Source: Mobula birostris
Lineage: Eukaryota
Assembly: GCF_030028105.1 (NCBI RefSeq)
Contig: NC_092384.1
Coordinates: 13,031,027-13,095,026 of the forward strand
DNA length: 64,000 nucleotides
Direction: 5' to 3'
Of the stretch, positions 14,586-49,370 are shown piece by piece. The notes under the pieces are model-generated. The model worked only from the letters and a program-made list of their open reading frames with translations. It was not told the DNA's origin and did no database searches. Numbering within the stretch: position 1 is the first letter of the stretch; the number at the start of each line of letters is the position of its first letter. The translations under genes were made by a program, and so were the position numbers.

Positions 14586-14659
14586 AGGTTTCTATGTTTC
14601 TATATTGTTAACATAATTATTAAAATCTAAAAATACGTGCAATTTAGTTATTTTTTTTA

Positions 14660-19172: not shown

Positions 19173-19320
19173 GGTGCGCTGAGATGTGTGTATCGTTCAT
19201 GAATTACGATTTAACTTGTTTAGTCTAAATCGTTCATTTTGTTTTATATTTTAATCCATTTATTCTTTTCATTTTCTGATATATATCTAAACTCACCCCT
19301 TTTTGCTTTATTTCTGGTAG

Positions 19321-19623
19321 CTGTGAAAGTAAGTTCGGGTAGGGTCTCTCAAATTCCAAAAGACTTGGAAGTCGCTGGAGGTGCAGAAGTTACCATGTTC
19401 TGCAAGATTCCCATTTTACAGAATACTTTTGATATTTATTGGTGGGAGGATGACAATAAACATTAATACAACAAGATGGTAGAAAACAATTTAATGTAGA
19501 AAGGGAAAGAGTGATATTTATCCTTCTGAATGTGAATGTTGCTGACTCTGGCATATATTACTGTCATGCAAAACATCAAGGACTTTCTTTAGGGATTGGA
19601 GGGCTCTCAGCTCATTCTGTTCA
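19321..19623 (+). pseudogene. V(J)-set Ig exon of copy 1, frameshifted
   Basis: Acceptor TTTCTGGTAG. VSQIPKDLEV..GAEVTMFCKIPI...DIYWW, then in a shifted frame LIQQDGRKQFNV...LLNVNVADSGIYYC, then in a shifted frame GSQLILF. About 44/95 identities to the intact V by hand alignment. Confidence 0.9.
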
Positions 19624-20790: not shown

Positions 20791-20859
20791 AGGCAAAAGA
20801 TGGCACTGCTGAGGGTGAGTGACAACTTACTGGTGATTAACGAAACAAGAATTTCAAAC

Positions 20860-21045: not shown

Positions 21046-21069
21046 CTTTTTTTTGTGAAGAATGAGAAC

Positions 21070-23050
21070 TAAATATTTTATTAATAACACTTTTTCTGGT
21101 TAAAAAAAGAAGATATGGTAAAGGATCACCACAATGAGAGGCAAGCGAAGGTGAGGCTGAATCAAGGGTCACAGTGCATGGGTTGAGGCGAATTTCGGGC
21201 GAGGTCGAGGCTTATTCAAGGACCGAGTGGAGCCAAAGAGAGGCAGATTCGGGGCCTGTCCACCTCAACCGAGAGCTGGGCCTTATTGATCTAAGCGCCA
21301 GATCTATTTGCAAAGGGCAGGTAAGGCTGAAACGTGGTGGTGGGGTAATATATAAAATATGAAGGTAAGCTAGGCAATAATATTAAAGAGGATATCAAAA
21401 GAATTTTTTAGGTATATAAAATGTAAAAGAGAGACGTGAGCAGATATTGAATCACTGGAAAATGATAATGGAGTAATGGGAGACAAAGAAATATCCGACG
21501 AACTCAGTAAGTCTTTTGAATCAGCTTTCACTCTGGAGGACACCAGCTGTATGGCAAAAATTCAAGAGTGCCAGGGGGCAGGAGTGAGTGTAGTTGCTTT
21601 TACTAAGGGAAGCTGCTTGGGAGGCAGAAAAGTCTGGAGAGTGATAAGTCACTTGGACCAGATGGACTACACCTCAGGCTTCTGAAAGAGGCATCTGAAG
21701 AGATTCTTGAGGCAATCGTCATGATGTTTCGAGAATCAATCGCAACTGGTATGGTTCAGCAGGACTGGAAAATTGCAAAACTCTCAAAGAAGGGAGGGAG
21801 ACAAATATAGAAAAGTATAGACCTGACTTCAACAGCTGGAAAGATGTTGGCCTCATTATTAAGGATGTGCTCTCGGGGTACTTTGAGACACATGATAATT
21901 AGGCCGAAGTCAGCATGGTTTCCTTCAGTGGGAATTTTGTCTGAGACATCTGCTGGAATTCTTTAAGGAATTGACAGGCTGAGTAGACGAAAGTTAGTGG
22001 ATGTCATTTACTTGGATTTTCAGAGGCCTTTAACAGGATGCCACACTGGAGGCTGCGGAACAAGATAAGAACACGTAGTAATACAGTAAAGATACTAGCG
22101 TAGACAGAAGATAGTCAGACTGGCAGGGGTGAAAGATAGCCTTTTCTGTCTGGCTGTCGGTAACTAGTGCTGGTAGACAGGGGTTGTTTTTGGGACCGTT
22201 TCTTTTTATGTTACATGCCAATGATTTGGTTGATGAAATTAATGGCTTTGTGGGCAATTTTGCTATGACACAAAGATAGCTACATTGGCAGATAGTGTTG
22301 AGGAAGTCATGAATCTGCAGAAGTACTTAGATGGTTTAAGAAAATGGGCAAATAGGTAGTAGATGAAATATAGTGCTGGGAAGTGTATGGTCATGCAATT
22401 TTGCAGAAGGAATAGAAGAGTATACTACTTTCTAAATGGGAGAAAAATCAGAAATGGGAACTGTAAAGAGATTTGGGAGCCCTCGTGCAGGATGTCCTAA
22501 AGTTCAACTTACATGATGAGTTGATGGTAAGGAAAGCAAATGCAATGGTACAGTTATTTCGGGAGGACTGGACTATAAACGCAACGATGTAATGCTGAGG
22601 TTTAATAAAGAATTCATCAGACCACACTTCGAGTATTGCCATCAGCTTCAGGCCATTAATCTACGAAATGAAATCGCGGCAATATGTTTGCGAGAATGAT
22701 TCCAGGAATGAAATATGAGGAGCGTTTGATGGCTCTGGGCTTGTATACACTGGAGTTTAGAAGAACTGGGGGGGGGGGGGGGGGAGGGAATCTCGTTGAA
22801 ACCTATCAAATATTGAAAGCCCAGATAGAGAGGATGTGGAGAGAATAATACCCGTAGTGAGGGATGCTGAGACCACATGGCACAGCATCAGAATACGATG
22901 ATGTCCTTTTAAAACAGAGACGAGGAGGAATTTCTTGAGCCAGAAATTGGTGACTTCCTGGAACTTATTGCCATAGAGAGCTTGGAAGCCAAGTGATTGA
23001 GTATATTTAAAACAGGGTTTTTAAAAACAAGGGTATGAAAGGCTAAGGAC
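21070..23050 (+). mobile_element. Decayed CR1 LINE (5' piece and ORF2 RT region)
   Basis: VDVIYLDFQR.FN.MPH, QGLFLGPFLF.L..NDL, RPHFEYC.Q and RRNFLSQ..V..WN.LP motifs in broken frames. Confidence 0.8.
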
Positions 23051-23060
23051 TAAGGGTCTA

Positions 23061-23690
23061 AAGTTCAATTTAAAGTATATTTTATTATCAAAGTATGTCA
23101 CCACATACAACTCCAAGATTCATTTCCTGCAGGCAGACTCAGCAAATCTGAGTATTTACATAAGGATCAATGAAAGAACAAGTAGAGTATAGAAGACAAC
23201 AAACGTTGCAATTGCAAATATAATTAAATAGCAATTCATACCGAGAACATGAAGTAACATGATAAAGTGTACTTAAAGTGAAATATTTGTTTGTGGGACA
23301 TCTCAATGGATGGGCAAGTGAGTGTAGTTATCCGCCTTTGTTCAAGAGCCTGATGGTTGAGGGGTAGTAACTGTCCTTGAACTTGGTGGTGCAAGACCTG
23401 AGGCTTCTACTTTCTACCTGATGGAAGCAGTGAGAAAAAAACATACCCTGGGTGGTGAGCATCTCTGATTATAGATGTTGCTTTCCTGCAACAGAATTTC
23501 ATGATGGTGTGCTCAGTGGTTGGGAAAGCCTTTACCCGTGATGTACTGGGTTGAGTCCAGCACCTTTTATAGGATTTTCTGTTCAAAGTAATTAGCGTTT
23601 GTATTCCAGGCTGTGATGCAGCCAGTCAATGTACTCTCCACTACACATTTATACAAGTTTGTGAACATTTTTGATGTCATGTCAAATGTG
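23061..23690 (-). mobile_element. Rex1/Babar-type LINE 3' end
   Basis: Homologous to 4691-5570 and 43205-43640 (GAGCCTGATGGTTGAGGGGTAGTAACTGT..., CAGGCTGTGATGCAGCCAGTC). Confidence 0.7.
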
Positions 23691-24350
23691 GGACTGTAGG
23701 GCTGAGAGGGATAATAAAGCAACTATCATGAAATGGCAGAGCAGATGGTTTGAGAAGGGTAATAAATCAACTGTGATGGAATGACAGAGCAGATGGGCCC
23801 TTTGGCCCAATGCTGCTCACATTTCGTATGGTCTCATGGGTCTTATGTCAACAAGCTGCCCTCAGAATATGTGTAACAATATAATGTCTAGCGTTTACCC
23901 TGCTAATGCATTCACCGGGAAACTTTCTGGCATTTTAAAATGCAAAGTTAATGTGTTGTTGCAAATTATCAGTAGCATGTACTTCTCCTGACCAACTACA
24001 ACAACAAAAAAAGGAAATAGAGTGCTATGCAGATATCTGCAGTGAGTTCTGTTGGGGCTGTTTGGTAAGGGAGATAGCATCGTGGGGTTGAAAGTCAGAG
24101 GAATCACCATCCAGTGAAATGATCAGACCCAAGGTGTAAAATGTACTCATGTTTCCAACTCGAATCTGAGCTGTACCACATTTCGTTGCACAGATTCTTG
24201 CAAAAAAAAATCAAATGTCGAAAAGAAAGCCTTGATGTAAAATTAACACAGAAATACATCTATAACTAAAATAGTATGCAAGATTTTCCATGCCAGTTCT
24301 CAACTTTGGTGTCTTCTCTGATCATCATGCAGACATTAGTAAGTTTCATA

Positions 24351-24975: not shown

Positions 24976-25005
24976 CAACATACAATATATGCTTTATATT
25001 TCAGC

Positions 25006-25811
25006 TCCTCCGAATCCATTGCTGCAGTTGAAGGAACTCCTGAACTAATGTGTAAAACTGCTGCGTTTTATCCAAAGAAACTAGAAATCTTCTGGTGGAG
25101 AAATAATGTAGAAATTCTGACCAGAATACAAACCATGATAAACAGAAGTGCGGATGGATTGTTCGGGGCTCTCAGTTTTTTGGAAGTAGTGCATCCTTCC
25201 TGGGGTAAAGACGTTTACATCTGCCTGGTATATTGTAGCTTCCCCAGTGCTGACTTGATAGGAAACCTAGAAACATAGAAAACCTGCAGTACCATGCAGG
25301 CTCTTCGGGCCACAAAGCTCTGCCAACCTTGTCCTTACCTTAGAAATTACCTAGGGTTACCCATAGCCCTCTATTTTTCTGAGCTCCATGTACCTATCTA
25401 GAGTCTGTATCCGCCTCCACTACCGTTGCTGGCAGCCTATTCCACGCACTCCACCACTCTCTGCATAAAAAAAAAAACTTACCCCTGACATCTCCTCTGT
25501 ACCTACTTCCAAGCACCACAAAACTGTGCCCTGTCGTGCTAGCCATTTCAGCCCTGGGCAAAAGCCTCTGACTATCCACACGATCAATGCCTCTCATCAT
25601 CTTCATCTATCAGGTCACCTCTCATCCTCCGTCGCTCCAAGGAGAAAAGGCCAAGTTCACTCAACCTATTCTCATAAGGCATGTCCCCCAATCCAGGCAA
25701 CATCCTTGTAAGTATCCTCTACACCCTTTCTATGGATTTCCACATCCTTTCATGTACTGAGGCAACCAGAACTGAGCACAGTACTCCAAGTCAGCTACGT
25801 CATCGAACAAG
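25006..25811 (+). pseudogene. C1-set exon of copy 1, frameshifted and split by CR1 (25006-25258 plus 25791-25811)
   Basis: Acceptor TATTTCAG. APPNPL, then in a shifted frame AVEGTPELMCKTAAFYPKKLEIFWWRNN...YICLV. After the CR1 insert, TC AGC TAC GTC ATC GAA CAA G|GTATGA (SYVIEQ) matches SYIIKK G|GTAAGG of the intact gene. Confidence 0.88.
25259..25790 (-). mobile_element. 5'-truncated CR1 inserted into the C1 exon
   Basis: Reverse complement of the CR1 3' end seen at 18400-18945 (ORF 25394-25606, [16 protein letters not shown]...). Confidence 0.92.
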
Positions 25812-27444: not shown

Positions 27445-28830
27445 CTCCCCTTCCTCAGAGGAAGGTTCCACACAGGATGGTTTCCAGACATTCAAATGCC
27501 TCCTTGCAAAGGTCATTCCATACAAATCTTTCACTGTTCCCCAGGAGTTTTGTTAGGGGGAGAGCGATGTCAGCAAAGTTCTTACTTAACTTACAATAAT
27601 TCCTAACCATTCCTAAAAACCTTCTTAAAGCTTCCTTGCCCATCAGAACAGGAACTTCAGCAACAGCTTGAACCTTGGCCTGCACAGGAGCCATTTGGCC
27701 CTGGCCTACCACATAACCCAGATATGTAACTGTGGCATGGCCAAACTCACTTCTAGTGAGGTTCACAGTAAGATTGGCCTTGAAAAGTCTGTCAAACTGT
27801 TTTTCTACAGCTGCAATATGCTCTTCCCATGTGTCATTCCAGACCACTAAATCCTTGATATAAACCCCTGTGCTTTCTAACCCTCCAATCACAGAATTGA
27901 TCATTCTTTGAAATGTCCCTGGAGGACTTTCCATCCCGAAGTGTAAAACATTGTACTCATACAGTCTAGATGGTGTCACAAATGCCTAAATCTCTTTAGC
28001 CCTCTCTGTTAAAGGAACACCCCAGTATCCTTTTAACAAGTCAATCTTAACAAGGTATTTAGCCTTCCCCACTCTATCAATACAGTCATCCATTCTCTTT
28101 CCTTGTTCTTTCCTATTTCTAATTTCTTCTTCAACCATTTTACTTTTCTCAAAGTTCGCTCTGTGAAGATGCCGTTTCATAGGCCGGGCTGAATTCATAA
28201 TGACGTGATGCACTACAACTGTGCACCATTTCAAAATGCCAGTTAGTCCTTTTACTTGCTTTTGTGGTTTTGGGTCCAACTGCTGGACCTTATCAGTAAT
28301 ATTTTTCAAAACAATGGAATTCTGACATCTCAGTGAGTCTAGATTCAGTGGGTAAACATGCTTTTCCACTCCTTTATCAGCTTCCATGACTCCATTTTGT
28401 TCCATAACAATTCTCCCAGCTGCAATTCTAGCAAACAAATGTCTTATTTTGACTCGACCATTTTGTAAACTTTCCTTGGCAAAGTCACAAAGCCTACTAA
28501 ATCTTTCCCAGAATTTTAAAACAGAATTAAGCACACTGACACATATTTCTAAATCAGACCATAGTTCTCTAAGTAGGGTCAAAGGTCCTTTTGCCCTGTA
28601 ACTGAATACAAGTTCCAACAAACTACCCTTCACTGCCTTCTGAATCGAATCTCCAACAATAATTAAGAGTAGGGGAACCTCCTCATCTCAATTTTTCCCA
28701 TTTCTCACACAATGTGCTTTAATCATGGACTTAAGAGTTGAGATGAGCCGTTCCAAGCCTCCCTTGGACTCTAGGAAGTTATGGCACAGCTGTCTAGCAT
28801 CCCTCATTGATTCCAGGCTAGTCCGGAATC
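27445..28830 (-). mobile_element. Gmr1-like Gypsy internal region: integrase followed by RT, RNase H absent
   Basis: Minus order: integrase (..GGLERLISTLKSMI..., ELVFSYRAKGPLTLLRE), then RT (DDCIDRVGKAKYLVKIDLLKGYW; FGME..PGTFQRMIN; YIKDLVVW; VTYLGYVVG; LRRFLGMV), then PPT. Confidence 0.88.
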
Positions 28831-34883: not shown

Positions 34884-34981
34884 CCCTTTTGTGGCAATCG
34901 AATGTTTTATACATTTGATGATGAAGTTTTATTTATTCACCGAACCGTTGATTCCAAACTGCAGTTCATTTATATTGGAGT

Positions 34982-35036
34982 ATGTCTGCGGAAATTACAG
35001 TTCGACACATAGTTCTTCTGGGCACAATTTGGCAAG
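34982..35036 (+). CDS. Exon 1 (signal peptide) of intact germline VJ-C1-TM Ig-superfamily receptor
   Basis: ATG...CAA G|GTATTC, 55 nt, phase 1. MSAEITVRHIVLLGTIWQ joins in frame to VVAAVTSG. Confidence 0.75.
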
Positions 35037-35221
35037 GTATTCTTACTTCTGATTATCGATGGCTGTTTTTCGTTATGCTACCTTGATTGCGCACTGCAAG
35101 TTTAATTATAATACATATTCAATTTTTCTCGCTGCCTTTAATTTTAATTCTATATTATGTGTTTCTTTTTTGTCTTTGTCCACAATGTTCGGTTATTGTC
35201 TCTGCCGTGTTTATTTTCTAG

Positions 35222-35530
35222 TAGTCGCTGCTGTAACTTCAGGCAACGTGGATCAATTCCCGAAGGATCTGCACATCTTCCGAGGTGAAAACGTTTCCAT
35301 GTTTTGCAGATTTCCGATATCTCAAGCCATTCGTGATGTTTATTGGTGGAAAGAGGGCGAGAAGAATTTTATAGAAGCAGACACCAGGAAACACTTTAAT
35401 GTAAACAAAGGCAGGGGTACATTTGCTCTGCTGGGTGCGACCGTCACAGATATCGGCACTTACTATTGCCAAGTGCTGCAACAGGACCAATCTGTTGGCA
35501 ATGGAAGTGGCACGCAGTTAACTGTGTTCG
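35222..35530 (+). CDS. Exon 2: V-set Ig domain with J-like G strand
   Basis: Acceptor TTTTCTAG, donor G|GTAAGA, 309 nt, phase 1-1. Canonical Cys, YWW, DxGTYYC and GNGSGTQLTV. Confidence 0.95.
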
Positions 35531-35914
35531 GTAAGAGTCTTTATAGCGAGAAATCCATATTTTCAGTCCCATACCAAGTAAATATTGGACATTAAATGAA
35601 AATCGTGTAACTCAACAAAAATTCCGTAGCGCTGAATTCATCTTATTCATTGAAAAGTATATTGTGAAGCATACAAGTGGAATAATAGAATTTTAAAAAA
35701 ACGTTCAAGTATGACTTCGTCATATCTGCAATATATATGTTGAATCGAAGCCACACTTTGTGCTGAATATTACAAAATGAATCACAGAATTAACTTTAAT
35801 TTAAATGATGTGACAATATTATCTGGCACCTAACGCAATCTTAACTGTAAACGTAGATAAAGTACCAAGATATGCTGGAAGTAATAAGCAGATCGGCCTG
35901 CATCTATGGAGCCA

Positions 35915-35970
35915 GACACACACAAAACACACACACACACACACCACATACATTCACACATACACACACC
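35915..35970. repeat. Imperfect (CA)n microsatellite
   Basis: Direct reading. Confidence 0.8.
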
Positions 35971-36117
35971 CATGCTTTTTGATTGTTTTATTTTAACTTC
36001 AGCTTGGAGTAGAATTGTCCATTCGCATTCTACAATTCTGCACTTCTATCTGCGTTTATCCTCGTGATATTGGAAAGAGCTTTTCATCCAAAACACTATA
36101 ACTCCTGTGTATTTCCA

Positions 36118-37212
36118 TTCATCATCAGGTGCCTTGCCGTTCGACGGGGGCGATCACGTCTCTCCATCCATCACGGGCTCTGACACTCCGAATTGAATTT
36201 GTTGCCTCCCCTGTTTCTAACCATGATATTAATCCATCTATCATTTTCATTCTGTCTGTCTCTGCTTTTTCCTTCCAGCTGTAACTAAATGTCCTAATGT
36301 CTCTTTTCGCATGATGTGTCCAAAGAATTTTGATTGCTGTTTTCTGATTTTTTTAAGTAATGTACGTTTTGTTTTCGTTCTCTGTAGAACTTCTTCGTTG
36401 GTTATCCCGTCCGTATATGATATGCATAGCATTCTTCTAAGGAACCACATCTCTGCAGCATTGATTCTTTTTTCCATTGCATTTGTGATGGTCGATGACC
36501 CTCAGCCATACATCAATATAGGAAGAATGTAGCAGCTGAGAGTTCTAAGGCGGATATCAATTGCTATTTTCTCATAAGATGTTTCTCATTTCTGTAAATG
36601 CTGTTCTTGCCATTGCTATTCTTGCTTTTATGTCTGTTTCGCATTTGCCATCAGATGTTACCCATGATCCAAGGTAATTGAAGTTGTGGACTTGCTTCAG
36701 GATTTCATTTCCCAATACGATCCTACAGCTTGTGATATCAGGTTTCTTTGGTATTGCCATTACTTCAGTTTTCTTTTTGTTTAAGGTTAGGCCAAGTCTT
36801 TCGCACTCTGTGTTGATGGTAATACTAGTTTCTGTAAATTTACTTCACTGGTTGCTCTCAGTACTGTATCATCCGCATAACAGAGGTTGTTGATATTGTA
36901 TCCTCCTATACTAATTCCAGGTGGGTCTTGTGTGGTTCTCATGATGTTTTCTCTGTACAGGGAGAGCAGGTCTGGTGATGGAACACAACCCTGTCTGACA
37001 CCTCGCTTTATTGGTTGATATTCACCAATCTCGTTTTCCATCCGTATGGATACACTTTGTTGCCAGTAGAGATTCTTGATTATTCTTAGATCTTTTCCGT
37101 CGATATTAATATCCTTAAACATTTTGATGATGACTTGGTGTTTCACTGTGTCAAAGCCTTTTGTGTAGTCAATGAAACAGAGGTATAGGTCTTGTTGTAG
37201 TTCTATTGACCT
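36118..37212 (-). mobile_element. RTE-clade (BovB-like) LINE, 5'-truncated, in intron 2
   Basis: FIDYTK.FDTVKH; KRGVRQGC..SPDL..LY.E; INNLCYADDTVL; RINAAEMWFLRRML.IS; FFGHIMRKE; tail ending TGATGA. Confidence 0.9.
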
Positions 37213-37511
37213 TTATTTCCATTATGTAACATTAAAAGGCAATTGTTCCATTTCAGCAAGATAGATTTATCAAATCTCCCACAATGTAATGTATAGCACC
37301 ATTCCTACTTTAGGAGCACTGCTTCAAATCACGAATCCAATATTTTGTTAAATGTCTAGACAAGGACAAATACATGTTGTATCTGTTGAAGAAGAAACCG
37401 AGTTCGTTCTTTTCTGCGTTTGTGTTTCTCTAACTTATATGTCCATGGACAACCGTACAGTCCTGTCAATTTACGCAGGAAAATTTTGCGTTACTAACAG
37501 ACTATACAGAA

Positions 37512-37561
37512 GAAAGTGAAGGAGTGGCAGAATACGTGTACGGAGTTCCGCTTTCACTTTT
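37512..37561. promoter_or_regulatory. Inverted pair of IRF-element-like motifs in intron 2
   Basis: GAAAGTGAA at 37512-37520 and GCTTTCACTTTT at 37550-37561 (AAAAGTGAAAGC on the minus strand, matching the IRF-E consensus). Confidence 0.35.
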
Positions 37562-38016
37562 GTCCCTTTATTTCAATGGATGCGATGTTCCATACAATAC
37601 ACGTTTGCGTGCATTACACTTTCATGCCATTAGGAGTATCAAGCGCTCAGATCGTTTTCGGAAGAAAAGCTTGCCCGAACTTACAACACCATCCCAGGCA
37701 CAAATATGCTGCCTAAACAATTGTGAGAGCCCGACTTCCATCCATTTGCATCCTAACACGTGCCTGTAGATAACGGCAATTTTTCACACATTTTGGTCCT
37801 TGAAGTTAAGAAGATATTTAACGTCAACTCAGATCGCATGCTGCATCTGGCATTCCCACAGAGCTGCGACCCAGAGCTCGAAAGTTACCATTTCTTACCA
37901 GATTCGTATTCTTTGAGTATTGCTTGAAATCATTCTTTTAGATTCCCGTAGAGTAGTTTAGAAACCAGGAATAAACTAAAAAAGGTTAAAACCACAGTGC
38001 GGTAACTTGTCATAAT

Positions 38017-38522
38017 TGTTATGGTCCGGTCCGTGAAGTCCGCATTCCGGTTTACGGTCCTGTCCGTGGAGTCAGGACTCCAGGTCTTCCACTGTCCCTT
38101 GTTTTGATTGAGTCAATCATAGGCACTTGATTGCCATCTTTGAGCTTGGAATATAAGTAGCCTTGGGGTCGACTGTGGGCTGCTGGTATGTCTTGTCAAG
38201 ATTTCCTGGGAGTAACCTGCCGGGGAGAGGCTAGAGCGGCCACCTGCCACCTGCAAGCCGTGTTGGAGAACCATCGCTTCATGGAGCCTTGCTGTTGGTA
38301 GTCGGAACTGTCGTTGCTGTATGGATTCGGCTGTTTCCCGGGCCAGCTGAGTGGCTGCCAGCCACTCAGAGCTAGGTAGGGATCCGGCTGTTTCCGTAGC
38401 TAGCTGAGGTTGCTGGCCGAACTGAGACTCGGAGCTACCCCAATGCAGAGATGGAACTGTCTGACGTTCTTCAGTGTCTGTGTCTTGCATTTGGGTCCGT
38501 TCCCAACGCCCCCATTGTGACA
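38017..38522 (+). mobile_element. Solo LTR with perfect 5-bp TSD, in intron 2
   Basis: TGTTATGG...TGTGACA termini with ATAAT on both sides (38012-38016 and 38523-38527). TATA-like AATATAAG. Confidence 0.88.
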
Positions 38523-38612
38523 ATAATAGCAATAGACATTCTCATGCGAAATAAACAAGCAGATATTCAATGCAAAAAAACCAAAATAACGAATATATCT
38601 TTTCTATTAAAG

Positions 38613-38897
38613 CTTCCCCTATACCCTTGAAAATAGTTCCCGTTGAAGGAACCTCGTTGCGTTCTCAAAGACTAGAATGCAAAACGTCTGCGTTTTATCC
38701 GGAAAAAATTGAAATCTCCTGGCGAAGAAATAATGAGGAAATACTGAACGGAATAGAAATTGTGAAAAACAGGAGTGAGGAAGGGTTGTATGAAGCTTCC
38801 AGTTTTTTGGAAGAAACCAAACCTGCTGTTTACACCTGCTTGGTATCACATGCCACGCTCACGGTACCGGCGGCGCTCAGCTACATCATCAAAAAAG
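38613..38897 (+). CDS. Exon 3: C1-set Ig domain
   Basis: Acceptor TTTTCTATTAAAG, donor G|GTAAGG, 285 nt, phase 1-1. CKTSAFYPEKIEISW...GLYEASSFL...YTCLVSH (C1 signature CxxxxFYP...W...YxCxVxH). Confidence 0.95.
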
Positions 38898-39144
38898 GTA
38901 AGGCTGCAAGCAGTTGTAACAGGGATCGTTTTTGCAGGTTCAACAAGATTAGGATGGATATCGACAGTATTTCATACGAACTAAGAATAGAGCTAAGAAA
39001 TAAGAATTCTTAGAAACTAAGAATTTTGTATATATATACTAAACTGTATTTATTCATATGAAAGAAGAATGTACAAGATACATAGTAGCGAATATATCAT
39101 GTAGGGCACAGAGTTGTTGCTATTTTCCTAAATGTATTTCTTTG

Positions 39145-39252
39145 TATGGGCTATGGGTAAGCCTAGTAATTTCTAAGGTAGGGACATGTTCAGCACAACT
39201 TTGTGTGCCGAAGGGCCTGTATTGTGCTGTGGGTTTTCTATGTTTCTATGTT
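39145..39252 (+). mobile_element. Short CR1 3' tail in intron 3
   Basis: GGGCTATGGGTAA.CCTAGTAATTTCTAAGGTAGGGACATGTTC.GCACAACTTTGTG.GCCGAAGGGCCTG, as at 18840-18945. Confidence 0.8.
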
Positions 39253-39289
39253 ATGCACTTCACATTTGCTTATTTCTCTCTTGAATAAG

Positions 39290-39386
39290 ATGCAGATAAA
39301 ATCCTGATTATCGGATGTGCTGTGGGTGGATTGGTAATTTTAGTCCTGACAGTAATTTTGGTGACTCAGAAGAACAAATCGACATG
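39290..39386 (+). CDS. Exon 4: transmembrane segment and start of cytoplasmic tail
   Basis: Pyrimidine tract then ...ATAAG acceptor, donor TG|GTAAGA, 97 nt, phase 1-2. DADKILIIGCAVGGLVILVLTVILVTQKNKST. An alternative in-frame acceptor exists at 39296. Confidence 0.85.
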
Positions 39387-42019
39387 GTAAGAATTGCTTA
39401 CGGTTTCCAATGCTTTCGTTTCTAGCTTGTTGTTTCCAAATGACACGATAACAGCGCTTAACAAAATTAAATATTAGAACGAAACGGGCCTAACTTGTAT
39501 CATGTCCCTGACAAATTAATCAGATGCCTGGTAATAAACCTAAATCATCAAATACAAATATTTTATTCAACAAACAACCATATGTTGTTGGTTATGTTTT
39601 ACAACTTGTTATTATATCATTGCAGCTCCATATATTAAAATATGAATAGGTCATCACTTTCTGTTCTCAAATCAGTTGATAGCTAATTGCCGACCGATAA
39701 ATATTCCCTCGTTAAATTCCCATTATAATTTTGAATATATAACATGGCTGCGGTGACATCAGCCATTTACATTTTCATTCAAATTCAAGATCTAATCGAA
39801 ATCGGCAAAGGGGATATAATTCACGAAACGAGAGGGCGAACGTAATCCACAAAATACAATATTGAAATAACGGGTATTGCTACACACCTCCATAAAGTAC
39901 TTTCAGACGATCTTACTTTGGATAATAAAATCGATTTCATCACGATATGATGTTCATCCTATTGATTTATGGCTGTTTTTCCCCTTTCCTTTCGAAGTAA
40001 GTATAACTCTTTGGTATGAGGCGAGAAGCAAATTTAGGGAGAAGAAACTGATTTTTCTTGGTTTCTGAAGATGGTAGACTGGTAAAAGAAGCAAATATCA
40101 TGTTAATTCATTAGAATTTTAGAACTTCGCTGGACAGAAAGAAGCCAGATTGACTGCATTTACTGTTTATTTGCAAAATACATACAATGAGCATTTCAAC
40201 TTTCCTCGTAAATCAGCGTTGAGCATTCATTCAGGAATATAAATGGCTCATAAGTTTTAAATGCTTGTGAAAAGATGTGGAGCGTGGATCTTAAAGGGGA
40301 GCTTTTGCATGTATTCGTGGATAGTCAGGAATGTTTTAAATACTTGACATGCCGATTCCAAACATTTTACAATAGTGTAAATCCTATGATATTTTGGGAC
40401 ATTAACTGCAAAGTTCAAACATCTACGTGTCCGGAAGTGAAAACAGGTTATATATTCCCTTTCACCCTTTTGGCCCTTTTCCATAGTTAGCAATATTTTT
40501 GCCTTACTTTGGATCTATGCTTGATGATGATTGATGATTTCATTAAAATTAACTTTAAAATTAAAAAGGGGAAATTTCAATCTAGATAGCTCCATAAATT
40601 GCGTTGCAAGATTATGACCACCTGATAATACCTCTAAAGATGCAAAAGTACCTCGCCTTCAGGTTACTCACCTAAAGACTGAAGTGACTGCAAAACAGGA
40701 CGATCTGAGACGCAGGGAACAAAGATTTAGCTTTCAATTATTAAGTATGGGGTGTCAGCTTTTGCTCGAACTCCATTTCCTAGAATTTCTTACCAGTACT
40801 CGCACAAGCTCACTGTAAAACCCGTGGACACAGCAACTTGACCGTCGCCGATCCTTAAAATGATCATTTGCAACATTAGTATCTCAATGCGTCGGTTGCA
40901 TAAAGGCTGCTTTGATCATAGCATTCAGCTGCTCACTTAATTACTTTGTATTAACGTTCATATGAAAGGTTGGATGTCAAAATGAGAACGAGTATTGTTT
41001 TGTGGGCTAGGACCTTAGCAAAGTATTACAGCAGGAAAGTGAAATCAGAAAAAGGAAGTATTTAAAAAGGACAAAAGATATGGTTAGTGCATCGCTGATT
41101 ATCTGAGAATACACGTATTGCCATTTTGTTTCAAGTACAATTGCCTCTGTAATCACTGCATGATAAAGTAATGAACGATGTGATTTACTTTTACAGACCA
41201 CAAGACATGAAATTAACAAATTGGTTTAGGCCACTATGCATCTTCCCAGTTCCAGCAACGCATCAGCATTTATCGAGAAAGACGAACGAATGCAGATTTT
41301 AAATAAGGCGAGAAGCTGATAATCGAAGCAATCTTCCATAACGTGAACTATGAACAAACGCAGGCCCAATAAATTGCTAGCTTCATTTAAATGTAGTTGT
41401 GGTTAAGAAGGATAATGGAGGATTTTGAAGTGTCTCTTAAGCCTTCCTTGAGCTGATTCTTGGGCGGAAATGCCCGCCGGCAAATGAGTAATCACCATTC
41501 AGTGCTGAAAATGTGGACAAAAATGCCAGTTGAAACGGAGAAAAGCAAAGCTTTGTTTTTGTCCCTTTACATTGTTTTAAATGTGAATGGTATCGCTGGC
41601 AGCATGTTTGTCAAAAATTATCGGCGTTTTCTTGTCAAATTTATTTCTTAATGGTGACAACAAAATGGCAACTTATTCAAATTTTGAGACAATCAAAATG
41701 TCCTTGAATAATCGACATATGCTGTAATGCAGCAGGAAATTTCAAGTTGCATTCCTGGCCCATTATTGCAAATGAATTCTTCAGGTTTGCTTAATCACGT
41801 GTTCCACCCTAGATGGAAGGTGAAGGCCGGTTGTTCAAATTCATAATCGTTAAAAAAGAAATGGCCTTTAGGTACCAGCTCATCAACGAGCAACTCATTA
41901 GGAAATGGTGTTTCTCCGGTAAAGTCTGCTCTACATCTAAATGAGCGGCTGTCAGCAGAGAATGTGAATTCGCATCCATACATACATTATAATCGCGTGT
42001 TATCTTTACTAACTACCAC

Positions 42020-42530
42020 TGAGGTATCTAATAAAGTAGCCACGGAATATATTTTTGTATGTTCGAGATCTTTTGCTGTTGTAGACCATCCACATCGACG
42101 TGTTGTACGTTCAGAGATGCTCTTCTGTACACCACTATTGTAATATGTGGTTTCTGTCGACCTCCTGTCAGCTTGAATCAATCTAGCCACTTTCCACTGA
42201 ACTCTTTCAATAACAACACGTTTTCACCCACAAGACAGCCGTTCACTGGGTGCTCTTTTACACACCACTCTCTTTAAGCATGAGAGACTGTTGCGTGTGA
42301 AGATCCCAGGAGAACAGCAGTTTTTGAGATATCCAAATAATCCCGCCTGGCATCAACAATCATTCCACGGTCAAAATTATTTATTCCCCATTCTGGTATT
42401 TGGTCTGAACAACAACTGAACCTCTTGACCATATCTGTACCTTTTTATGCATCGCTTTGCGCCATATGATCGGCTGATTGGATATTTGCATTAACGATCA
42501 GGTGTAAGGGTGTACTTAATAAAATGGCCA
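42020..42530 (-). mobile_element. Second copy of the non-autonomous Tc1-like element
   Basis: Reverse-complement match to 9546-10106 (CTAATAAAGTAGCCAC; GTACTTAATAAAATGGCCA; ORF 41987-42190 MARLIQADRR..T.YYNSGVQKSISERTTR). Confidence 0.78.
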
Positions 42531-44340: not shown

Positions 44341-47300
44341 ATTATTTGACAATATTTGACCGTCATAAAGGTCAAATTGAGTTCCTTTTCCCAATCTTGT
44401 TTAATCTTAAATAAAGGATGCTTATCCCATTGTAATAAAAAAATATAAATTCTTCCAACAGAACCCTTCATCGAAGGGTTCGTACTTATAATAGTGTCTA
44501 ACAGGTCAGCATCCAATATGTCAGCAAAATTACTTAAATATTTTCTGTAAAAAATTGTCTAACTTGAAGGTATTGTAAAAAGTGTGAGTATGAAAGAGAA
44601 TATTTATCAACTAATTGTTCAAAAGACATCAATCTATCTTCTTTAAATAAATCCAAAAAAGAATTAATACATTTATTTTTCCAAAGTAAACAACTGGATC
44701 CTTAAAGAGGCTTAAAAAAGTAATTCCGATAAATTAAACTAAAAAGTTTAAATTTTTTAAGATTAAAAAAATTGCAGAACTGGAGCCAAATTCATAAAGA
44801 ATGCTTAATCATAGGGTATAGGTTTAAATTAGCAACTTTAGCTAATTGTATAGGTAAAGCAACTCCCAATAACGAGGTTGAATAAAGCTGTTTCACAGCT
44901 TTCAATTCCAGGTCTACCCAAATTGGCCGATCATTCTTATCAACCCATTCTAACCAAAAGGACATGGATCGCACATTAACAGCCCAGTAATACATTCTTA
45001 AATTAGGCAAAGTGAGACCTCTATCCTTTTTCAGCTTTTGTAAGTGACATTTACTAATTCTTGGTCTTTTATTATTCCAAATAAAAGATAAAATAATAGA
45101 ATCAATCTGATCGAAAAACTTCTTAGTCAAAAAACAGGGAAATTCTGAAATAAATATTAAAAAAATTGGTAAAATCATCATTTTGACTATATGGATATGA
45201 CCAACAAGTGAAAATGTAAGTGGACTCCATCTACTAAATAAATAATTCATAGAGTCTACCAAGGGAAAGAAATTGGCTTTATAAAGATCCTTTTTTTTTA
45301 GTGATTATAACACCTAAATATCTAAAAGAATCCGTGACTTTGAAAGGAGTATTATCATATATAGAGACAGATTCATTTAAAGGAAACAATTCACTTATAC
45401 TAAAATTTATTTTATATCCTGAAAAATCTCCAAATTCATTGAATAATTTTACCAAGGCAGGAATAGATTTCTCGGGATTAGATATATAAACCAATAAATC
45501 GTCAGCGTAAAGAGAAAGCTTATGAATGGTCTCATTCACAAAACTCCCTTGAATATTTTTAGCTTTACGTACAGCAATATCAAGGGGTTCTAATATTAAA
45601 TTAAATAACAAAGGACTTAATGGACAACCTTGTCTCGTCCCCCGTGAAAGCTGAAAAAAGGAGACCTACAGTTGTTAGTGACAACAGTAGCAATAGGAGC
45701 TTTATATATCATTCTAATCCAATTATTAGTATTAACACCAAAGCCAAATTTCTCTAAAACATTAAATAAATATTTCCATTCGACTCGATCGAACGTTTTT
45801 ACAGCATCCAAAGAGACGGCGCATTGTGGAGTTTTAAAAGAGGACTAATATATAACCTTAAATAGTTTCCCAACATTTGAAAAAGAATAACGACCCTTTA
45901 TAAAGCCTGTTTGATCATTAAAAGTTATTTTACCCAAAATATTCTCTGACCAATTGGCCATTACCTTTGACATAATCTTAGCATCGACATTCAGTCCTGA
46001 AATAGATCCACATGAGGCATAGTCAATAGGATCTTCATCCTTTTTATTAATTAAAGAAATAGAAGCCTCATAGAAAGTAGAGGGTAAATCACCTTTCACA
46101 AATGAATCCTTAAACATTTCCAACATATACAGAGAAAGAAATGTTCCAAATTTTTTTGTAAAATTCTACAGGATAGCCATCAAGTCCAGGGGACTTAACA
46201 GATTGCATTGAAAAAACAGCTTCATGAATTTCGGTTTCAGTAATTTGGGCATCAAGAGTTTTTTGATCCTCAACAGAAATTTTAGGAAAAGCAATCTTTC
46301 ATAAGGAAGCATTCATTTCAGAAGAATCTACTGGTCATTGAGATTTATAAAGTTCAGTATAAAAGTCTTGAAAAATCTTATTAATTACTTCATATTCCCA
46401 AGCCAGGGTACCATCTTTCCTACGAATTTTCAAAATTTGCCTTTTGGCTCTAGCTGTTTTTAATTGAGATGTTTATTATTTTTGTCTACAAACATATAAA
46501 ATTGGCCCTTTAACTTCAGCAAATCGCATTCAATGGGATGAGTTAATACTAGATTATATTGTGATTGAAGTTCCACCCTTTGTTTGAATAAATCAATATT
46601 AGGGGAAATTGCATAAATATTATCTAAGTCTTTAATTTGTTTTGAAATCTTATCTAATTCTGCATTAGTCTGTTTTTTAAGCTTAGCTGAATAAGAAATG
46701 AACAGACCACGTAAAAATGCTTTAAATGCTATATAATTAATTTGGACGTACCCCCTGTATCATTAAAAAGAAAAAAATCTTTTATCTAGGTTTCAATGAA
46801 ACAGACAAGGTCGGAGTTTTGCAGTAATGTCTGAGACATGCACCATGGTGGACGGCCAAGAATTACATCATCAAATTCAAGACAAGCTCAAAGGCACATG
46901 ATAAGATATAGCAATAGTGTCATATTCACAATTTTTAACACTAGGTAAGAAGCGGGGATCGATTATATAATCCATCCTCGAATAATTTTATAAACATATG
47001 AAAAGAAAGAATATTCTCTGTTATCAGGGTGCAAATACCTTCATAATTCGATCAATCCAAAATCGGTCAAAAAGGAGTTAATAAGTGACGCAGAGCGATT
47101 TGGAAGTCGCTGATTGGTTGAGCTCTTGTCAATCAAAGGATTTAAACAACAGTTAAAATCCACGCTCATTATCAACATATATTCATTTAAATCAGGCGGT
47201 AAAGCAAATACCTTTTTTAAAAAAGAAGGATCATCTAATTTAGGACCATACAGATTGACCAAAACAACTTTTCTGTTGCAGATCACTCCTTTAATAATTA

Positions 47301-49370
47301 AAAATCTACCATTAGAATCTGACTCAATATCTTCCTGAGTATTGGATTTAATAAAGATGGACATGCCTTTAGTTTTACTCTGAGAAGTGGAGTGAAACTG
47401 CAAACTCCTCCACCATCTAAAAACTCTATTTTGATCTCCCGCCCTGATATGTGTTTCTTGAGCAGAAATTATATCAGGTTGGAATCGATTAATAATTTTA
47501 AACGTCTTTTTTCGTTTGATAGGATGATTCCAACCGCGTACATTCCAACTTACTACATGAATCCGTTTAAATACCATACTATAATTTTATTCTACTTTAC
47601 ACATGCGCAGAGCACATACCAATACGGGATGATCAAAAATGGCGGCGATGAAGAATGCAACTACATAGAGAACACGCATGCTCCGGAACCACAATGGGGA
47701 AAAAACTCCTAACTGTAACCCCACCCTCCTCCCCCCAAAGCCCAGAAAAACTTATGATAGAATACGAAGCCATGGACCGCTCTGTCTGTACAGGAAAAGA
47801 ATAAAAGGATTTTCTCTCCCTCCCCCAGTTAAAAAAAAAACAACTGACCTTGTAAGAAAAACAATAAAGTCTCAACAAGGGAAAGTATTTACATTCCAGC
47901 ATCTATTAAACAAGAAGGAACCAAAATAATGTTATCTCTTAAAAAGAAAAAAACGGTGCCATTTTTAATTTAACATTAAATCCATAAAAACATCTTTAAA
48001 TTCGTTTATAAGACGCTATAATAATGCAGAAAAAAATTGATAGCATATTTAACCTAACTAAATTTCCAAAAATGCCAATTAATAATATTATAAGTAATTG
48101 AACCCTCCCCTAAATATATAAATAGAAAGAAGCTCCATTAGTAGGAAAAACTAACAATTAGTTAATTAAGAAAGAAACATAAAAGAACATCAGAGCAGAT
48201 ATTCAGTTAAAGAAACAAGTCCCTTTATCTTCTTTTCTCAGTCGAATGTACGTGTGACCATTTAAACAGTCAAACTTGAACCATAGATCTTCTTTCCAAG
48301 AAAATCCAATAATATGCAATAATGAACAAATCTCCTTATTTTCTTGTGTTAGTCTCTCAATGGAATATCCAAGTAATCTTCATAAATCTTCTTTCCGAAA
48401 TGCCAATAATATACAGATAACCAAATAACCTTTCAGATAGTTCATTCGGTAGCGGCGGCAGGTATAATTTGAATGAACTCCAGTGCGGCTTTTGGATCAA
48501 AAAATGTACGAGGAGGAGAGTTAGGAGGAAAAACTTTAATTCTTGTCGGGTAACGCAAAGAAGGAAACAGTTTCTTATCATATGCGGGTTTCATTACCAG
48601 AGCAAATCTTGATCTTTTTTCCATTATCTCCTTCAGATAATCCTCATAAAAACAGATCCAGATTCCTTAAATCTAAAAACTCTCTGTTTTCTTTCCTGTC
48701 GATCTTTAATCTTAAAGTGATAAAAACAAACCAAAACAGATCTTGGTTTATTTGGATCTTTAAATTTAGAAGTAAAAGCTCTGTGTGTTCTTTCTACAGT
48801 AGGCGGCTGTGATAATATGGTAGGAAATAAAGTATGAAAAACTTTCCAAAGTAAACAGTTAAATCTCCATTTTCAGCTCCTTCTTGCAACCCAACGATTC
48901 GTATATTCCTTCGGTGAGACCTAGTTTCCAGGTCTATAATCTTATTTTAATATCTTTCTAAACGAGTTGTAGCTTCGAACAATTTTTGCTTAGTTATCTT
49001 CAGTTCCTCTTCGTGTGTAATAACTTGAGTTTCCAAGTCTTTAAGTTTTCCCAGAAATGACTTCATTTCATTGCTATTCTTTTCCAGTTGGTCTTTAATT
49101 GACCCATTCTGATCTTTAATTGAATTCAGTGCCCGAACGATATCTTCAGCCCATGGTGGCGTTTCATCAGATCTTTCCTTTCCCATTACCTTTGTCATTA
49201 TGCTCAGACAAGTTCTTCCCACTCCTCGTAGACATAGACAAATTGTCCCCACTCAAGAATTAGCAAATAAGAAAATTAAAATTCGAAGTTTAAACCAGGG
49301 GGAGAGAAACAAAACTAAGAGCAGCACAAAATTGCTGCTACTCCATTTTCAGACAGGCACGGTCTCTGGC
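44341..49370 (-). mobile_element. L1-clade LINE: 5' UTR, ORF1, long inter-ORF spacer, ORF2 (APE and RT), 3'-truncated
   Basis: ORF1 (48442-49252): coiled coil, DLETRSHRRNIRIVGLQEG, LRYPTRIKVF. ORF2: VSWNVRG, QETH, VNLYGP, NDQTGFIKGR, LDAVKTFDRVEWKYL, SLYADDLL, LTLPNLRMYYWA, WEKEL. Multiple frameshifts. Confidence 0.93.

What the first reader, a model, noticed from the sequence alone, without database searches (positions are those of the whole stretch)
34982..39386. Germline-joined VJ-C1-TM receptor: antigen-receptor-like architecture without rearrangement
Four exons splice in frame (55+309+285+97 nt) into signal peptide, V, C1 and TM. The V exon already contains a J-type G strand (GNGSGTQLTV) with no RSS between V and J, and it is followed by a single C1-set domain. 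This is the layout of a TCR or Ig light chain, but non-rearranging. Established relatives with VJ and/or C1 domains include SIRPs, NKp30, B7-H6, tapasin, NITRs and PRARP/VJC1-type genes discussed as descendants of the pre-RAG receptor. I cannot assign it to any of them. In a cartilaginous fish, the oldest lineage with RAG-based immunity, a tandem, turning-over family of this form is the strongest candidate here for an undescribed immune receptor system.
Basis: partly seen in the sequence, partly recalled or inferred. Interest (0 to 1): 0.85.

Follow-up and report, generated by a model that had tools for sequence, protein, structure and literature searches.

The report
Tail-less antibody-like ray receptor gene
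This is a real, transcribed ray gene for a membrane protein built like one antibody or T-cell-receptor chain with a ready-joined tip; it belongs to a large, apparently unstudied shark, ray and chimaera family of paired "on/off" immune receptors, and this copy has lost its inhibitory tail.

Summary
The four exons exist as described: AG/GT sites, phase-1 junctions, 248 codons. RNA contigs show the exon 3-4 splice and a fifth exon (41197-) whose first base completes a TGA stop. The protein is therefore split leader, germline-joined V(J), one C1-set domain, TM and a seven-residue stub.

It is not orphan. The red stingray has a 92%-identical predicted orthologue. I collected 97 full-length relatives, and every named relative is from a shark, ray or chimaera; each species' members listed here sit on one contig. 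Members have ITIM tails, Arg/Lys in the TM, or short neutral ends. These types interleave on the ectodomain tree, the signature of a paired inhibitory/activating family.

Exon 5 is the fossil of the last ITIM exon. It starts at the same codon as in a chimaera relative, and the ITIM tyrosine codon is now TAG. So this copy is a tail-less derivative of an inhibitory receptor, most likely a decoy or adhesion-type receptor like SIRPγ.

The V domain is compact, lacks C″, and matches shark VNAR and CD79b best, not SIRP, NKp30, B7-H6 or tapasin. I found no paper describing the family. This scan has already noted sibling VJ-C1 receptor genes elsewhere in this genome.

The parts
34982..35036 (+). Exon 1: start codon and the first 18 residues of a split leader (MSAEITVRHIVLLGTIWQ), ending in phase 1.
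   Evidence: One search gives the GT donor and the frame. The orthologue P0001 has the same N-terminus.
35222..35530 (+). Exon 2: end of the leader plus the germline-joined V(J) domain (C47...W60W61...YYC101...GNGSGTQLTVF). A tandem acceptor allows a start at 35222 or 35225.
   Evidence: Searches give the exon and V-set at 4e-8. All 22 family V domains match V-set best. The V-only model has pLDDT 94 and no C″ strand. No RSS heptamer is present.
38613..38897 (+). Exon 3: the C1-set domain (PIPLKI...LECKTSAFYPEKIEISW...YTCLVSH...).
   Evidence: Pfam C1-set scores 1.2e-9. The best PDB matches are UrIg2, MHC-I/MR1 alpha3 and Ig C-mu. RNA contigs start at the acceptor and join to exon 4.
39290..39386 (+). 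Exon 4: short stalk, a TM helix (ILIIGCAVGGLVILVLTVILV) with a GxxxG-like motif and a Cys but no charged residue, then QKNKST. It ends in phase 2 (TG|).
   Evidence: helix 221-247. RNA joints are 38897|39290 and 39386|41197.
41197..42055 (+). Exon 5: its first base completes the TGA stop and the rest is 3'UTR. Bases 41197-41334, read in phase 0, are the fossil of the family's last ITIM/ITSM exon (TTRHEINKLV*ATMHLPSSSNASAFIEKDER..KARS**). The 3' end is inferred from an AATAAA near 42032.
   Evidence: The RNA joint is seen in three runs and a contig runs at least 384 nt past 41600. tblastn of family tails hits exactly at the acceptor. The alignment scores 56 against shuffles of 30.9±4.1, reached by 0 of 500. 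The last exon of Callorhinchus P0196 begins at the same codon after ttttacag|ACC.
19299..19603 (+). V exon of an upstream paralogue. It is a pseudogene, with a stop and frameshift near 19460 and a degraded J motif.
24994..25251 (+). C1 exon of the same upstream pseudogene. The PPTPLKI start is missing and the frame is lost after YICLV.

Best explanation
The locus is an expressed five-exon gene for a 248-residue type I membrane protein. In order it encodes a split leader, a germline-joined compact V(J) domain, one C1-set domain, a short stalk, an uncharged TM helix and a seven-residue cytoplasmic stub.

It belongs to a multigene family found in sharks, rays and a chimaera, and each species' members listed here lie on one contig. 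Family members share the ectodomain but carry an ITIM/ITSM tail, an Arg/Lys in the TM, or a short neutral end. That makes it a paired inhibitory/activating receptor family.

This copy descends from an ITIM-bearing inhibitory gene. The intermediate cytoplasmic exons are gone. The TM exon (phase 2) now splices straight onto the old phase-0 ITIM exon, which gives an immediate TGA. In the old frame the ITIM tyrosine codon is a stop.

Inferred mechanism: the protein displays a ligand-binding VJ-C1 ectodomain at the cell surface but cannot recruit SHP-type phosphatases. It would then act as a decoy or competitor, or as an adhesion-type counter-receptor, for the ligand of its inhibitory paralogues, as SIRPγ does. 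Alternatively it could signal only through lateral association via its GxxxG/Cys TM motif.

The gene structure, transcript, family membership and tail loss are shown. Ligand binding, the decoy role and any partner are inferred.
For: - Gene structure and domains.
- Spliced RNA with the stop-completing exon 5, at depths of 9-85, and low-depth unspliced reads that would still give ...KSTW-stop.
- Orthologue P0001 at 92% identity, ending at the same KNKST.
- Family breadth, with every named member chondrichthyan.
- 97 full-ectodomain members, of which many carry ITIM tails or an Arg/Lys TM.
- Signalling types interleaved on the tree: 18 changes among the three signalling classes (ITIM, charged TM, short), and the ITIM label needs 23 changes against a shuffled mean of 24.8. 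Near-identical ectodomains carry opposite tails, for example P0171/P0180 and P0177/P0212.
- Fossil ITIM exon starting exactly at the RNA-confirmed acceptor. It begins at the same codon as the last exon of a Callorhinchus long-tailed gene.
- The tail-less state is shared with Hemitrygon, and the Pristis relative P0002 is also short.
- Organism B differs at about 0.5% in exons 3-4 (one difference identified as synonymous, CAA>CAG) against 1.2-2.5% in intron and UTR.
- The neighbouring pseudogene shows what unconstrained decay looks like here.
Against: - No ligand, partner, cell type or tissue is known.
- The TM has no charged residue, so adaptor coupling of the DAP12, FcRγ or CD3ζ type is not indicated.
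- Purifying selection was not measured, because the orthologue's DNA could not be fetched. The coding versus non-coding contrast rests on very few differences.
- The exon 1-2 and 2-3 joints were not seen directly (one search failed).
- The C1 domain differs more from the orthologue than the V domain does (82% against 92%), which is unusual if the V tip were under host-pathogen pressure.
Confidence: 0.6

Rival explanations
1. This is an antigen-receptor-like chain and a relic of the pre-RAG receptor. The VJ-C1-TM chain pairs with a second chain through V-V and C1-C1 contacts, like TCR or Ig, and the family descends directly from the gene type that the RAG transposon invaded.
For: - The layout matches a TCR or IgL chain, including the split leader and phase-1 introns, features that the UrIg2 paper stresses for antigen-receptor genes.
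- By single-sequence search the V domain matches shark VNAR best and TCR V-alpha further down the list, and the C1 domain matches UrIg2 and Ig C domains, rather than SIRP, B7 or tapasin.
- The TM carries a GxxxG-like motif and a conserved Cys, which could mediate pairing.
Against: - There is no membrane-proximal Cys for an interchain disulphide.
- The residue at the J Phe/Trp position is Asn inside an N-x-S/T sequon in 77 of 97 members. A glycan there would sit at the canonical V-V interface; this step rests on general structural knowledge, not on a test.
- The V domain lacks C′-C″.
- The family carries ITIM tails and Arg/Lys TMs like innate paired receptors.
- No phylogeny with outgroups could be built.
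Confidence: 0.1
2. This is the cartilaginous-fish SIRP family, with this gene as a SIRPγ-like member. That would make it an orthologue or co-orthologue of a characterised gene family.
For: - NCBI names many members 'tyrosine-protein phosphatase non-receptor type substrate 1-like' or 'SIRP beta-1-like'.
- SIRPα and SIRPβ give the highest TM-scores by query for the whole model, 0.61-0.64.
- The family splits three ways into ITIM, charged-TM and tail-less forms, which mirrors SIRPα/β/γ.
- The tails carry several YAxL motifs in series, as SIRPα does. The SIRPα side of this comparison is from my own memory.
Against: - Most listed members, including this one, have one C1 domain, whereas SIRPs have two.
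- No SIRP chain is among the 38 PDB sequences that match the V domain at E≤0.01, nor in the top 60 for C1.
- No bony-vertebrate SIRP was retrieved in the two profile searches, one of which ran at E≤10.
- The whole-model fold match is generic, with light chains, butyrophilins and B7s scoring alike.
- Synteny was not testable.
Confidence: 0.15
3. This is a dying gene. After losing its signalling tail the copy is transcribed but has no function, and it is on the way to the state of its upstream neighbour.
For: - The tail is lost and the fossil exon is decayed.
- A dead paralogue lies 15 kb upstream.
- The locus is rich in repeats and abuts a satellite block.
Against: - All four coding exons are intact, and the orthologue in Hemitrygon is also intact with the same short end.
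- Pristis also has a short-ended relative.
- The spliced RNA is several-fold more abundant than the unspliced background in two species.
- Exons differ less than introns and UTR between organisms A and B.
Confidence: 0.1
4. This is a ligand rather than a receptor: a B7-H6-like or B7-like surface molecule read by NKp30-type receptors, as the automatic name 'NCR3LG1-like' suggests.
For: - The automatic names suggest it.
- B7-H6, butyrophilins, CD80 and PD-L1 are among the fold matches for the whole model.
- The short tail is compatible with a ligand.
Against: - No B7-H6 chain is among the PDB sequence matches to the V domain at E≤0.01.
- For the V domain alone, the listed fold matches are VNAR, CD79b, TCR V and antibody V domains, plus NCAM; no B7-family chain is listed.
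- The relatives have ITIM tails and Arg/Lys TMs, which are hallmarks of receptors.
- From my own knowledge, B7-family V domains lack the J-like GxGTxLxV strand.
Confidence: 0.05

Closest known systems
SIRP family (SIRPα/β/γ), especially SIRPγ
   Same: - Non-rearranging V domain with a J-like G strand, followed by C1-set domain(s) and a TM.
- The family splits into ITIM-tailed, charged-TM and tail-less members.
- Rat and mouse SIRPα give the highest whole-model TM-scores by query, 0.63-0.64.
- The proposed working mode of this copy, ligand binding without intrinsic signalling, is that of SIRPγ.
   Different: - One C1 domain instead of two.
- The V domain lacks C″.
- No sequence-level affinity to SIRP V or C1 domains in the PDB searches.
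- Named relatives were found only in cartilaginous fish.
- Synteny was not tested.
PRARP genes (Fu et al. 2019, J Immunol 202:1992; cited in PMC10751288)
   Same: As I recall that paper, PRARPs are non-rearranging VJ + C1 + TM receptors with inhibitory tails. [quoted passage not shown]
   Different: No PRARP sequence or text was available to me, so nothing could be compared. An earlier, unchecked note of this scan places PRARP-like convergent gene pairs on another piece of this genome. If that holds, the present family would be a separate one.
UrIg / UrIg2 (PMC12227049; PDB 9dmx)
   Same: - Elasmobranch, non-rearranging, with VJ in one exon and a split leader.
- UrIg2 is the best or second-best PDB sequence match for the C1 domain.
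   Different: - UrIg and UrIg2 have several C domains; nurse shark UrIg2 has nine.
- The match is weak, with per-domain scores of about 18 bits.
- The text mentions neither a single-C1 form nor a split into ITIM, charged-TM and short forms for UrIg or UrIg2.
IgNAR variable domain (VNAR) and CD79b
   Same: - Best PDB matches for the V domain both by sequence (VNAR at 5e-7) and by fold (VNARs at TM 0.76-0.86, CD79b at 0.78).
- Shared compact V without C″.
- Shared VDQxP start, a VNKGxxxFxL stretch and G-x-G-T-x-L-T-V.
   Different: - VNAR is assembled by RAG from V, D and J segments and sits on a multi-domain secreted or membrane heavy chain.
- Here the VJ is germline-joined and followed by one C1 domain and a TM.
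- Identity is only 22-29%. Shared loss of C″ and shared host lineage may inflate the rank.
Teleost NITRs (novel immune-type receptors)
   Same: From my own knowledge, NITRs are a large, lineage-restricted, clustered family of non-rearranging V(J) receptors with ITIM-tailed and charged-TM members.
   Different: From my own knowledge, NITRs have V alone or V plus an I-type domain, not a C1-set domain, and are teleost genes. Here C1-set is clear.
TCR chains and Ig light chains
   Same: - V(J)-C1(-TM) order, split leader and phase-1 exon junctions.
- Light chains and TCRβ are top whole-model fold matches.
   Different: - No RSS and no separate J segment.
- No connecting-peptide Cys.
- No charged TM residues in this copy.

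Membership tests
Rearranging antigen receptors (TCR, IgL) | V and J are separate germline segments flanked by RSS. | tested here: not met
   V and the J-like strand are one uninterrupted exon. No CACAGTG or CACTGTG lies in 34901-35700.
SIRP | Ectodomain of one V plus two C1-set domains. | tested here: not met
   There is one V-set and one C1-set domain, then the TM.
SIRP | Sequence kinship of the V and C1 domains with SIRP domains above other IgSF families. | tested here: not met
   No SIRP chain is among all 38 PDB matches to the V domain at E≤0.01, and none is in the top 60 for C1. No SIRP from bony vertebrates was retrieved in the profile searches.
SIRP | Conserved synteny with the SIRP cluster, and binding to CD47. 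| not testable with these tools
   Only ±10 kb of context was obtainable. That context showed family members or nothing else.
PRARP | Orthology to chicken PRARP genes: VJ-C1-TM with an inhibitory tail, in a linked gene pair. | not testable with these tools
   The paper and its sequences are not held. The architecture is compatible, but this copy has no tail.
UrIg / UrIg2 | VJ followed by several C domains, with MHC or AgRC linkage. | tested here: not met
   The gene has a single C1 domain, whereas UrIg2 has nine C domains in nurse shark. Linkage was not tested.
NITR | V, or V plus an I-type domain, without a C1-set domain. | tested here: not met
   The second domain is C1-set at 1.2e-9 and carries the FYP...W...YTC.V.H signature.
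Paired inhibitory/activating IgSF receptor families (functional class) | Closely related ectodomains attached either to ITIM tails or to TMs with a basic residue, in gene clusters. | tested here: met
   Among 89 distinct ectodomains (97 members in all), 29 have ITIM-type tails and 15 have an Arg/Lys in the TM. The types are interleaved on the tree, with sister pairs of opposite type. The Callorhinchus genes are clustered.
Paired inhibitory/activating IgSF receptor families (functional class) | This copy itself carries a signalling motif or a charged TM residue. | tested here: not met
   The TM ILIIGCAVGGLVILVLTVILV is uncharged. The tail is TQKNKST followed by a stop that RNA confirms. The ITIM exon is a fossil.
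B7-H6 (NCR3LG1) | B7-type V and C domains, and binding to NKp30. | tested here: inconclusive
   B7-H6 is among the generic whole-model fold matches, but it is absent from the sequence matches to the V domain and from the 50 listed V-domain fold matches. Binding is not testable here.

The most novel reading that the evidence does not exclude
This chondrichthyan-only family could be the surviving non-rearranging cell-surface lineage from which the IgNAR variable domain was recruited or, more broadly, the closest living VJ-C1-TM relative of the gene invaded by the RAG transposon. The family combines a compact VNAR-like germline VJ domain that lacks C″, a single Ig/UrIg-like C1 domain and a TM. 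VNAR is the top PDB match of the V domain by both sequence and fold.
Probability: 0.07. Interest if true: 0.85.

Novelty: new variant of a known kind. Interest (0 to 1): 0.5.

Why it matters
Cartilaginous fish are the oldest lineage with RAG-based immunity, and their innate-type receptor families are poorly charted.

This gene gives a handle on a large shark, ray and chimaera family of non-rearranging VJ-C1 receptors with inhibitory, activating and tail-less forms. Databases label its members inconsistently as SIRPα-like, NCR3LG1-like, tapasin-related, MHC class II-like, Ig lambda-like or TCR beta-like. A proper description would do three things:
- correct those annotations;
- give comparative immunologists a counterpart to SIRPs, NITRs and KIR/LILR-type families in this lineage;
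- offer a dated, molecularly explicit case of an inhibitory receptor turning into a tail-less one through exon loss, a frame clash and an ITIM Tyr-to-stop change.

The VNAR-like V domain also gives a concrete candidate to include in trees that address where the NAR V domain and the antigen-receptor V domains came from.

Tried and rejected
- Laying reads over the whole gene failed on a filter at 35933-35968. The exon 1-2 and 2-3 joints are therefore only indirectly supported.
- DNA of the Hemitrygon orthologue was not retrievable, so no dN/dS and no exon-by-exon comparison was possible.
- Both remaining word-indexed homologue searches returned only chondrichthyan proteins, even at E≤10. I therefore obtained no SIRP, PRARP, B7-H6, tapasin, TCR or IgL sequences for an outgroup-rooted phylogeny.
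- The top 150 of the exhaustive HMM search were filled by giant multi-Ig proteins and by family members. It could not show the nearest bony-vertebrate relatives.
- The ESM Atlas look-up gave only generic Ig clusters.
- Whole-model fold searches were not discriminating, with light chains, TCRβ, butyrophilins, B7s and SIRPs scoring alike.
- Profile searches of the PDB rank multi-domain proteins first because scores are summed.
- The papers on PRARP, UrIg (2023), the primordial immune complex and B7H6/NKp30 co-evolution are not held. The supplements of the MHC paper did not contain the family's accessions, so MHC or paralogon linkage is untested.
- The other long ORFs in the window are transposon remnants (reverse transcriptase, endonuclease, GDSL esterase), not neighbouring genes.
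- No relics of the intermediate cytoplasmic exons were found in intron 4.

Full report
**Observation.** The three internal acceptors are AG and every donor is GT. All junctions are phase 1, and the product is an open frame of 248 codons plus two bases. Pfam places a V-set domain at residues 32-120 and a C1-set domain at 138-204. An AlphaFold model adds a C-terminal helix at 221-247 that corresponds to the transmembrane segment. The V exon runs without interruption from YYC through GNGSGTQLTVF, and no RSS heptamer occurs in or around it. The leader is split between exon 1 and the start of exon 2, the arrangement that the UrIg2 paper stresses for antigen-receptor genes. The exon 2 acceptor is a tandem tAGtAG, so the exon may begin at 35222 or 35225. 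The orthologue corresponds to 35225, and the difference is one Val inside the leader.

**Transcription.** Eight runs listed as RNA hold words of the locus. The second attempt, on 38500-41600, was informative.
- Contigs from organism A have no mismatches to the window, so this is the window's species. Contigs from organism B differ by about 1-2.5%.
- Both organisms join 38897 to 39290, and join 39386 to 41197. Both joints have GT..AG ends.
- Spliced depths are 9-85, against 3-12 for the unspliced background.
- Two contigs break exactly at the exon 3 acceptor and carry 311 and 29 more letters upstream, which fits the exon 2-3 splice.

Exon 5 begins with A, so the codon TG|A ends the protein at ...VTQKNKST. 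The rare unspliced form would add only Trp before a stop.

**Relatives.** The protein is 92% identical to a 247-residue prediction from the red stingray *Hemitrygon akajei*, which ends in the same KNKST and is named "NCR3LG1-like". Profile searches and cluster look-ups give relatives in these groups:
- rays and skates: Pristis, Mobula, Narcine, Hypanus, Amblyraja, Leucoraja;
- sharks: Heterodontus, Heptranchias, Scyliorhinus, Chiloscyllium, Hemiscyllium, Carcharodon, Cetorhinus, Mustelus, Stegostoma;
- the chimaera Callorhinchus.

All 20 representatives that I looked up by name are chondrichthyan. Apart from one weak V-only hit in a teleost (Gouania), no bony-vertebrate protein appeared, even at E≤10. 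In each species the listed members share one contig, and in Callorhinchus they form a cluster of at least 230 kb. The automatic names are inconsistent: SIRPα-like, SIRPβ-like, NCR3LG1-like, tapasin-related, CD276, PD-L1-like, MHC class II-like, Ig lambda-like and TCR beta-like.

**What kind of family.** I collected 97 members with a full ectodomain, which reduce to 89 distinct ectodomains for the tree. They fall into these groups:
- 29 have tails with ITIM/ITSM-type motifs, in a conserved series ...YAxLDL...RTVYAQTK...KLTYAALxL...TEYAEx...;
- 15 have an Arg or Lys in the outer third of the TM and short tails;
- 7 have short neutral ends like this gene;
- 19 are gene models with no detectable TM, and 19 have longer tails without a recognised motif.

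On a maximum-likelihood tree of the ectodomains these types are interleaved. Among the three signalling classes there are 18 changes, and the ITIM label alone needs 23 changes against a shuffled mean of 24.8. Several sister pairs have almost identical ectodomains and opposite ends, for example P0171/P0180 and P0177/P0212. This is the signature of a paired inhibitory/activating receptor family. The window gene groups with P0001 at 100% support. It lies inside a ray clade (99) whose nearest relatives are shark genes from Heptranchias, Scyliorhinus and Chiloscyllium.

**How this copy lost its tail.** tblastn of family tails against the DNA downstream of exon 4 gave its best hits exactly at the RNA-confirmed acceptor of exon 5.
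- Read in phase 0 from 41197, exon 5 spells TTRHEINKLV\*ATMHLPSSSNASAFIEKDER...KARS\*\*.
- This aligns with the last exon of long-tailed relatives: TKRNGADKLTYAALQLPDSKNTSGF in P0004, and KLTYASLQLQKSNKTTAFNEKDARAVYAGVKVSREARS-stop in P0007.
- The alignment scores 56, against 30.9±4.1 for 500 shuffles. None of the shuffles reached it, and the other two frames score 28-30.
- In Callorhinchus P0196 the last exon starts at the same codon, after the same acceptor context ttttacag|ACC.

In the ray gene the ITIM tyrosine codon is TAG and the ITSM stretch is deleted. The two intermediate cytoplasmic exons seen in Callorhinchus are not detectable. The TM exon ends in phase 2 and the old last exon is phase 0, so the splice now creates an immediate stop. 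The copy is therefore a derivative of an inhibitory receptor. The loss predates the split from Hemitrygon, and the Pristis relative is short as well. Between organisms A and B, exons 3-4 differ at about 0.5%, with the one listed difference synonymous, against 1.2-2.5% in intron and UTR. The paralogue 15 kb upstream has frameshifts and stops in both its V and C1 exons. I read this as weak but consistent evidence that the tail-less gene is maintained.

**The domains.** All 22 family V domains that I tested match Pfam V-set best. The domain is nonetheless short. The two cysteines are 54 or 59 positions apart in most members. A V-only model with pLDDT 94 has strands A, A′, B, C, D, E, F and G, only a vestigial C′, and no C″.

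The best PDB matches to the V domain are as follows.
- By single-sequence search: shark VNARs at 5e-7, then I-set domains, with TCR V-alpha and the amphioxus VJ-C2 protein among the weaker hits. No SIRP, NKp30, B7-H6 or tapasin chain appears among all 38 hits at E≤0.01.
- By fold: VNARs (TM 0.76-0.86), human CD79b, TCR V and lambda V domains.

The alignment to VNAR shares the VDQxP start, a VNKGxxxFxL stretch and G-x-G-T-x-L-T-V. The C1 domain matches UrIg2, MHC-I/MR1 alpha3, Ig C-mu, IgA and MHC-II beta2 best.

The J-like motif is usually GNG[ST]G[ST]. In 77 of 97 members the Asn at the place of the J Phe/Trp lies in an N-x-S/T sequon. If it is glycosylated, a canonical V-V dimer looks unlikely, although that step is inference. 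The ectodomain has no membrane-proximal Cys, while the TM carries a conserved G/A-C-A-x-G-G motif. Whole-model fold searches were generic.

**Mechanism.** I consider the gene model, the transcript, the family and the tail loss to be shown. Beyond that I infer that the protein shows the family's ligand-binding ectodomain at the cell surface without being able to recruit phosphatases. It would compete with, or complement, its inhibitory paralogues as a decoy or an adhesion-type counter-receptor, the role known for SIRPγ. Less likely, it signals by lateral association through its TM motif.

I rank four rivals lower: an antigen-receptor-like heterodimer, true SIRP orthology, a gene in decay, and a B7-H6-like ligand. 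My reasons are given under each rival.

**Comparison with what is known.**
- The gene fails the tested defining features of rearranging receptors (no RSS), SIRPs (one C1 domain, no sequence affinity), UrIg/UrIg2 (a single C domain) and NITRs (it has a C1-set domain).
- It meets the functional definition of a paired-receptor family at family level, but this copy has no signalling element.
- PRARP membership could not be tested, because neither the paper nor its sequences are held.
- Other unchecked notes record VJ-C1/ITIM clusters 9.7 Mb before and 4.3 Mb after this window on the same piece, and similar genes on other pieces. Those notes call the genome a manta ray. My own data only show that the closest annotated orthologue is from *Hemitrygon akajei* and that the window's protein is not itself in the protein collection.

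**Verdict.** This is a real, expressed, non-rearranging VJ-C1-TM gene. It is one tail-less member of a large, computationally predicted and apparently unstudied chondrichthyan paired-receptor family, not a stand-alone new receptor system. Descent from the pre-RAG receptor remains open. The fossil ITIM exon and the VNAR-like V domain are the two results most worth following up.

Noticed in passing
window 52153-64000: A satellite array with a 167-bp unit, about 70 copies at 81-82% identity, with 139- and 333-bp variants. It fills the last 12 kb of the window directly downstream of the receptor locus.
   Followed up: no
window 39148-39252 (intron 3): A repeat of about 100 bp, SINE-like, with enormous RNA contig depth (tens of thousands in all four runs). 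Many variant copies and loose ends indicate a highly transcribed dispersed element.
   Followed up: no
window 19299-19603 and 24994-25251: An upstream paralogue of the receptor gene that is a pseudogene. The V exon has a stop and frameshift near 19460 and a degraded J motif, and the C1 exon has lost its start and its frame after YICLV.
   Followed up: partly
window 35220-35225: A tandem NAGNAG acceptor (tAGtAG) at the start of the V exon. The two choices differ by one Val in the leader, and the Hemitrygon model corresponds to the downstream site.
   Followed up: partly
window 11953-12531, 27455-28633, 36787-37146, 47041-47577: Transposon remnants: a GDSL-esterase/OSK-type ORF, reverse-transcriptase fragments and an endonuclease fragment. 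The ORF at 36787-37146 inside intron 2 was not scanned and only looks like such a fragment. No other cellular gene was found in the 64 kb.
   Followed up: partly
window 12001-24000: A sustained positive GC skew of 0.09-0.40 over about 12 kb that spans the pseudogene's V exon. It is unexplained.
   Followed up: no
family proteins P0018 and P0023: Some relatives have duplicated modules. Amblyraja P0018 is V-C1-C1 with a near-identical second C1 domain, and Callorhinchus P0023 appears to be V-C1-V-C1. Domain number is therefore plastic in the family, or these gene models are fused.
   Followed up: no
family proteins P0009 versus P0007 (Narcine): Isoform X4 lacks the TM segment but keeps the ITIM tail sequence. 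This suggests TM-exon skipping and a possible soluble form in a relative.
   Followed up: no
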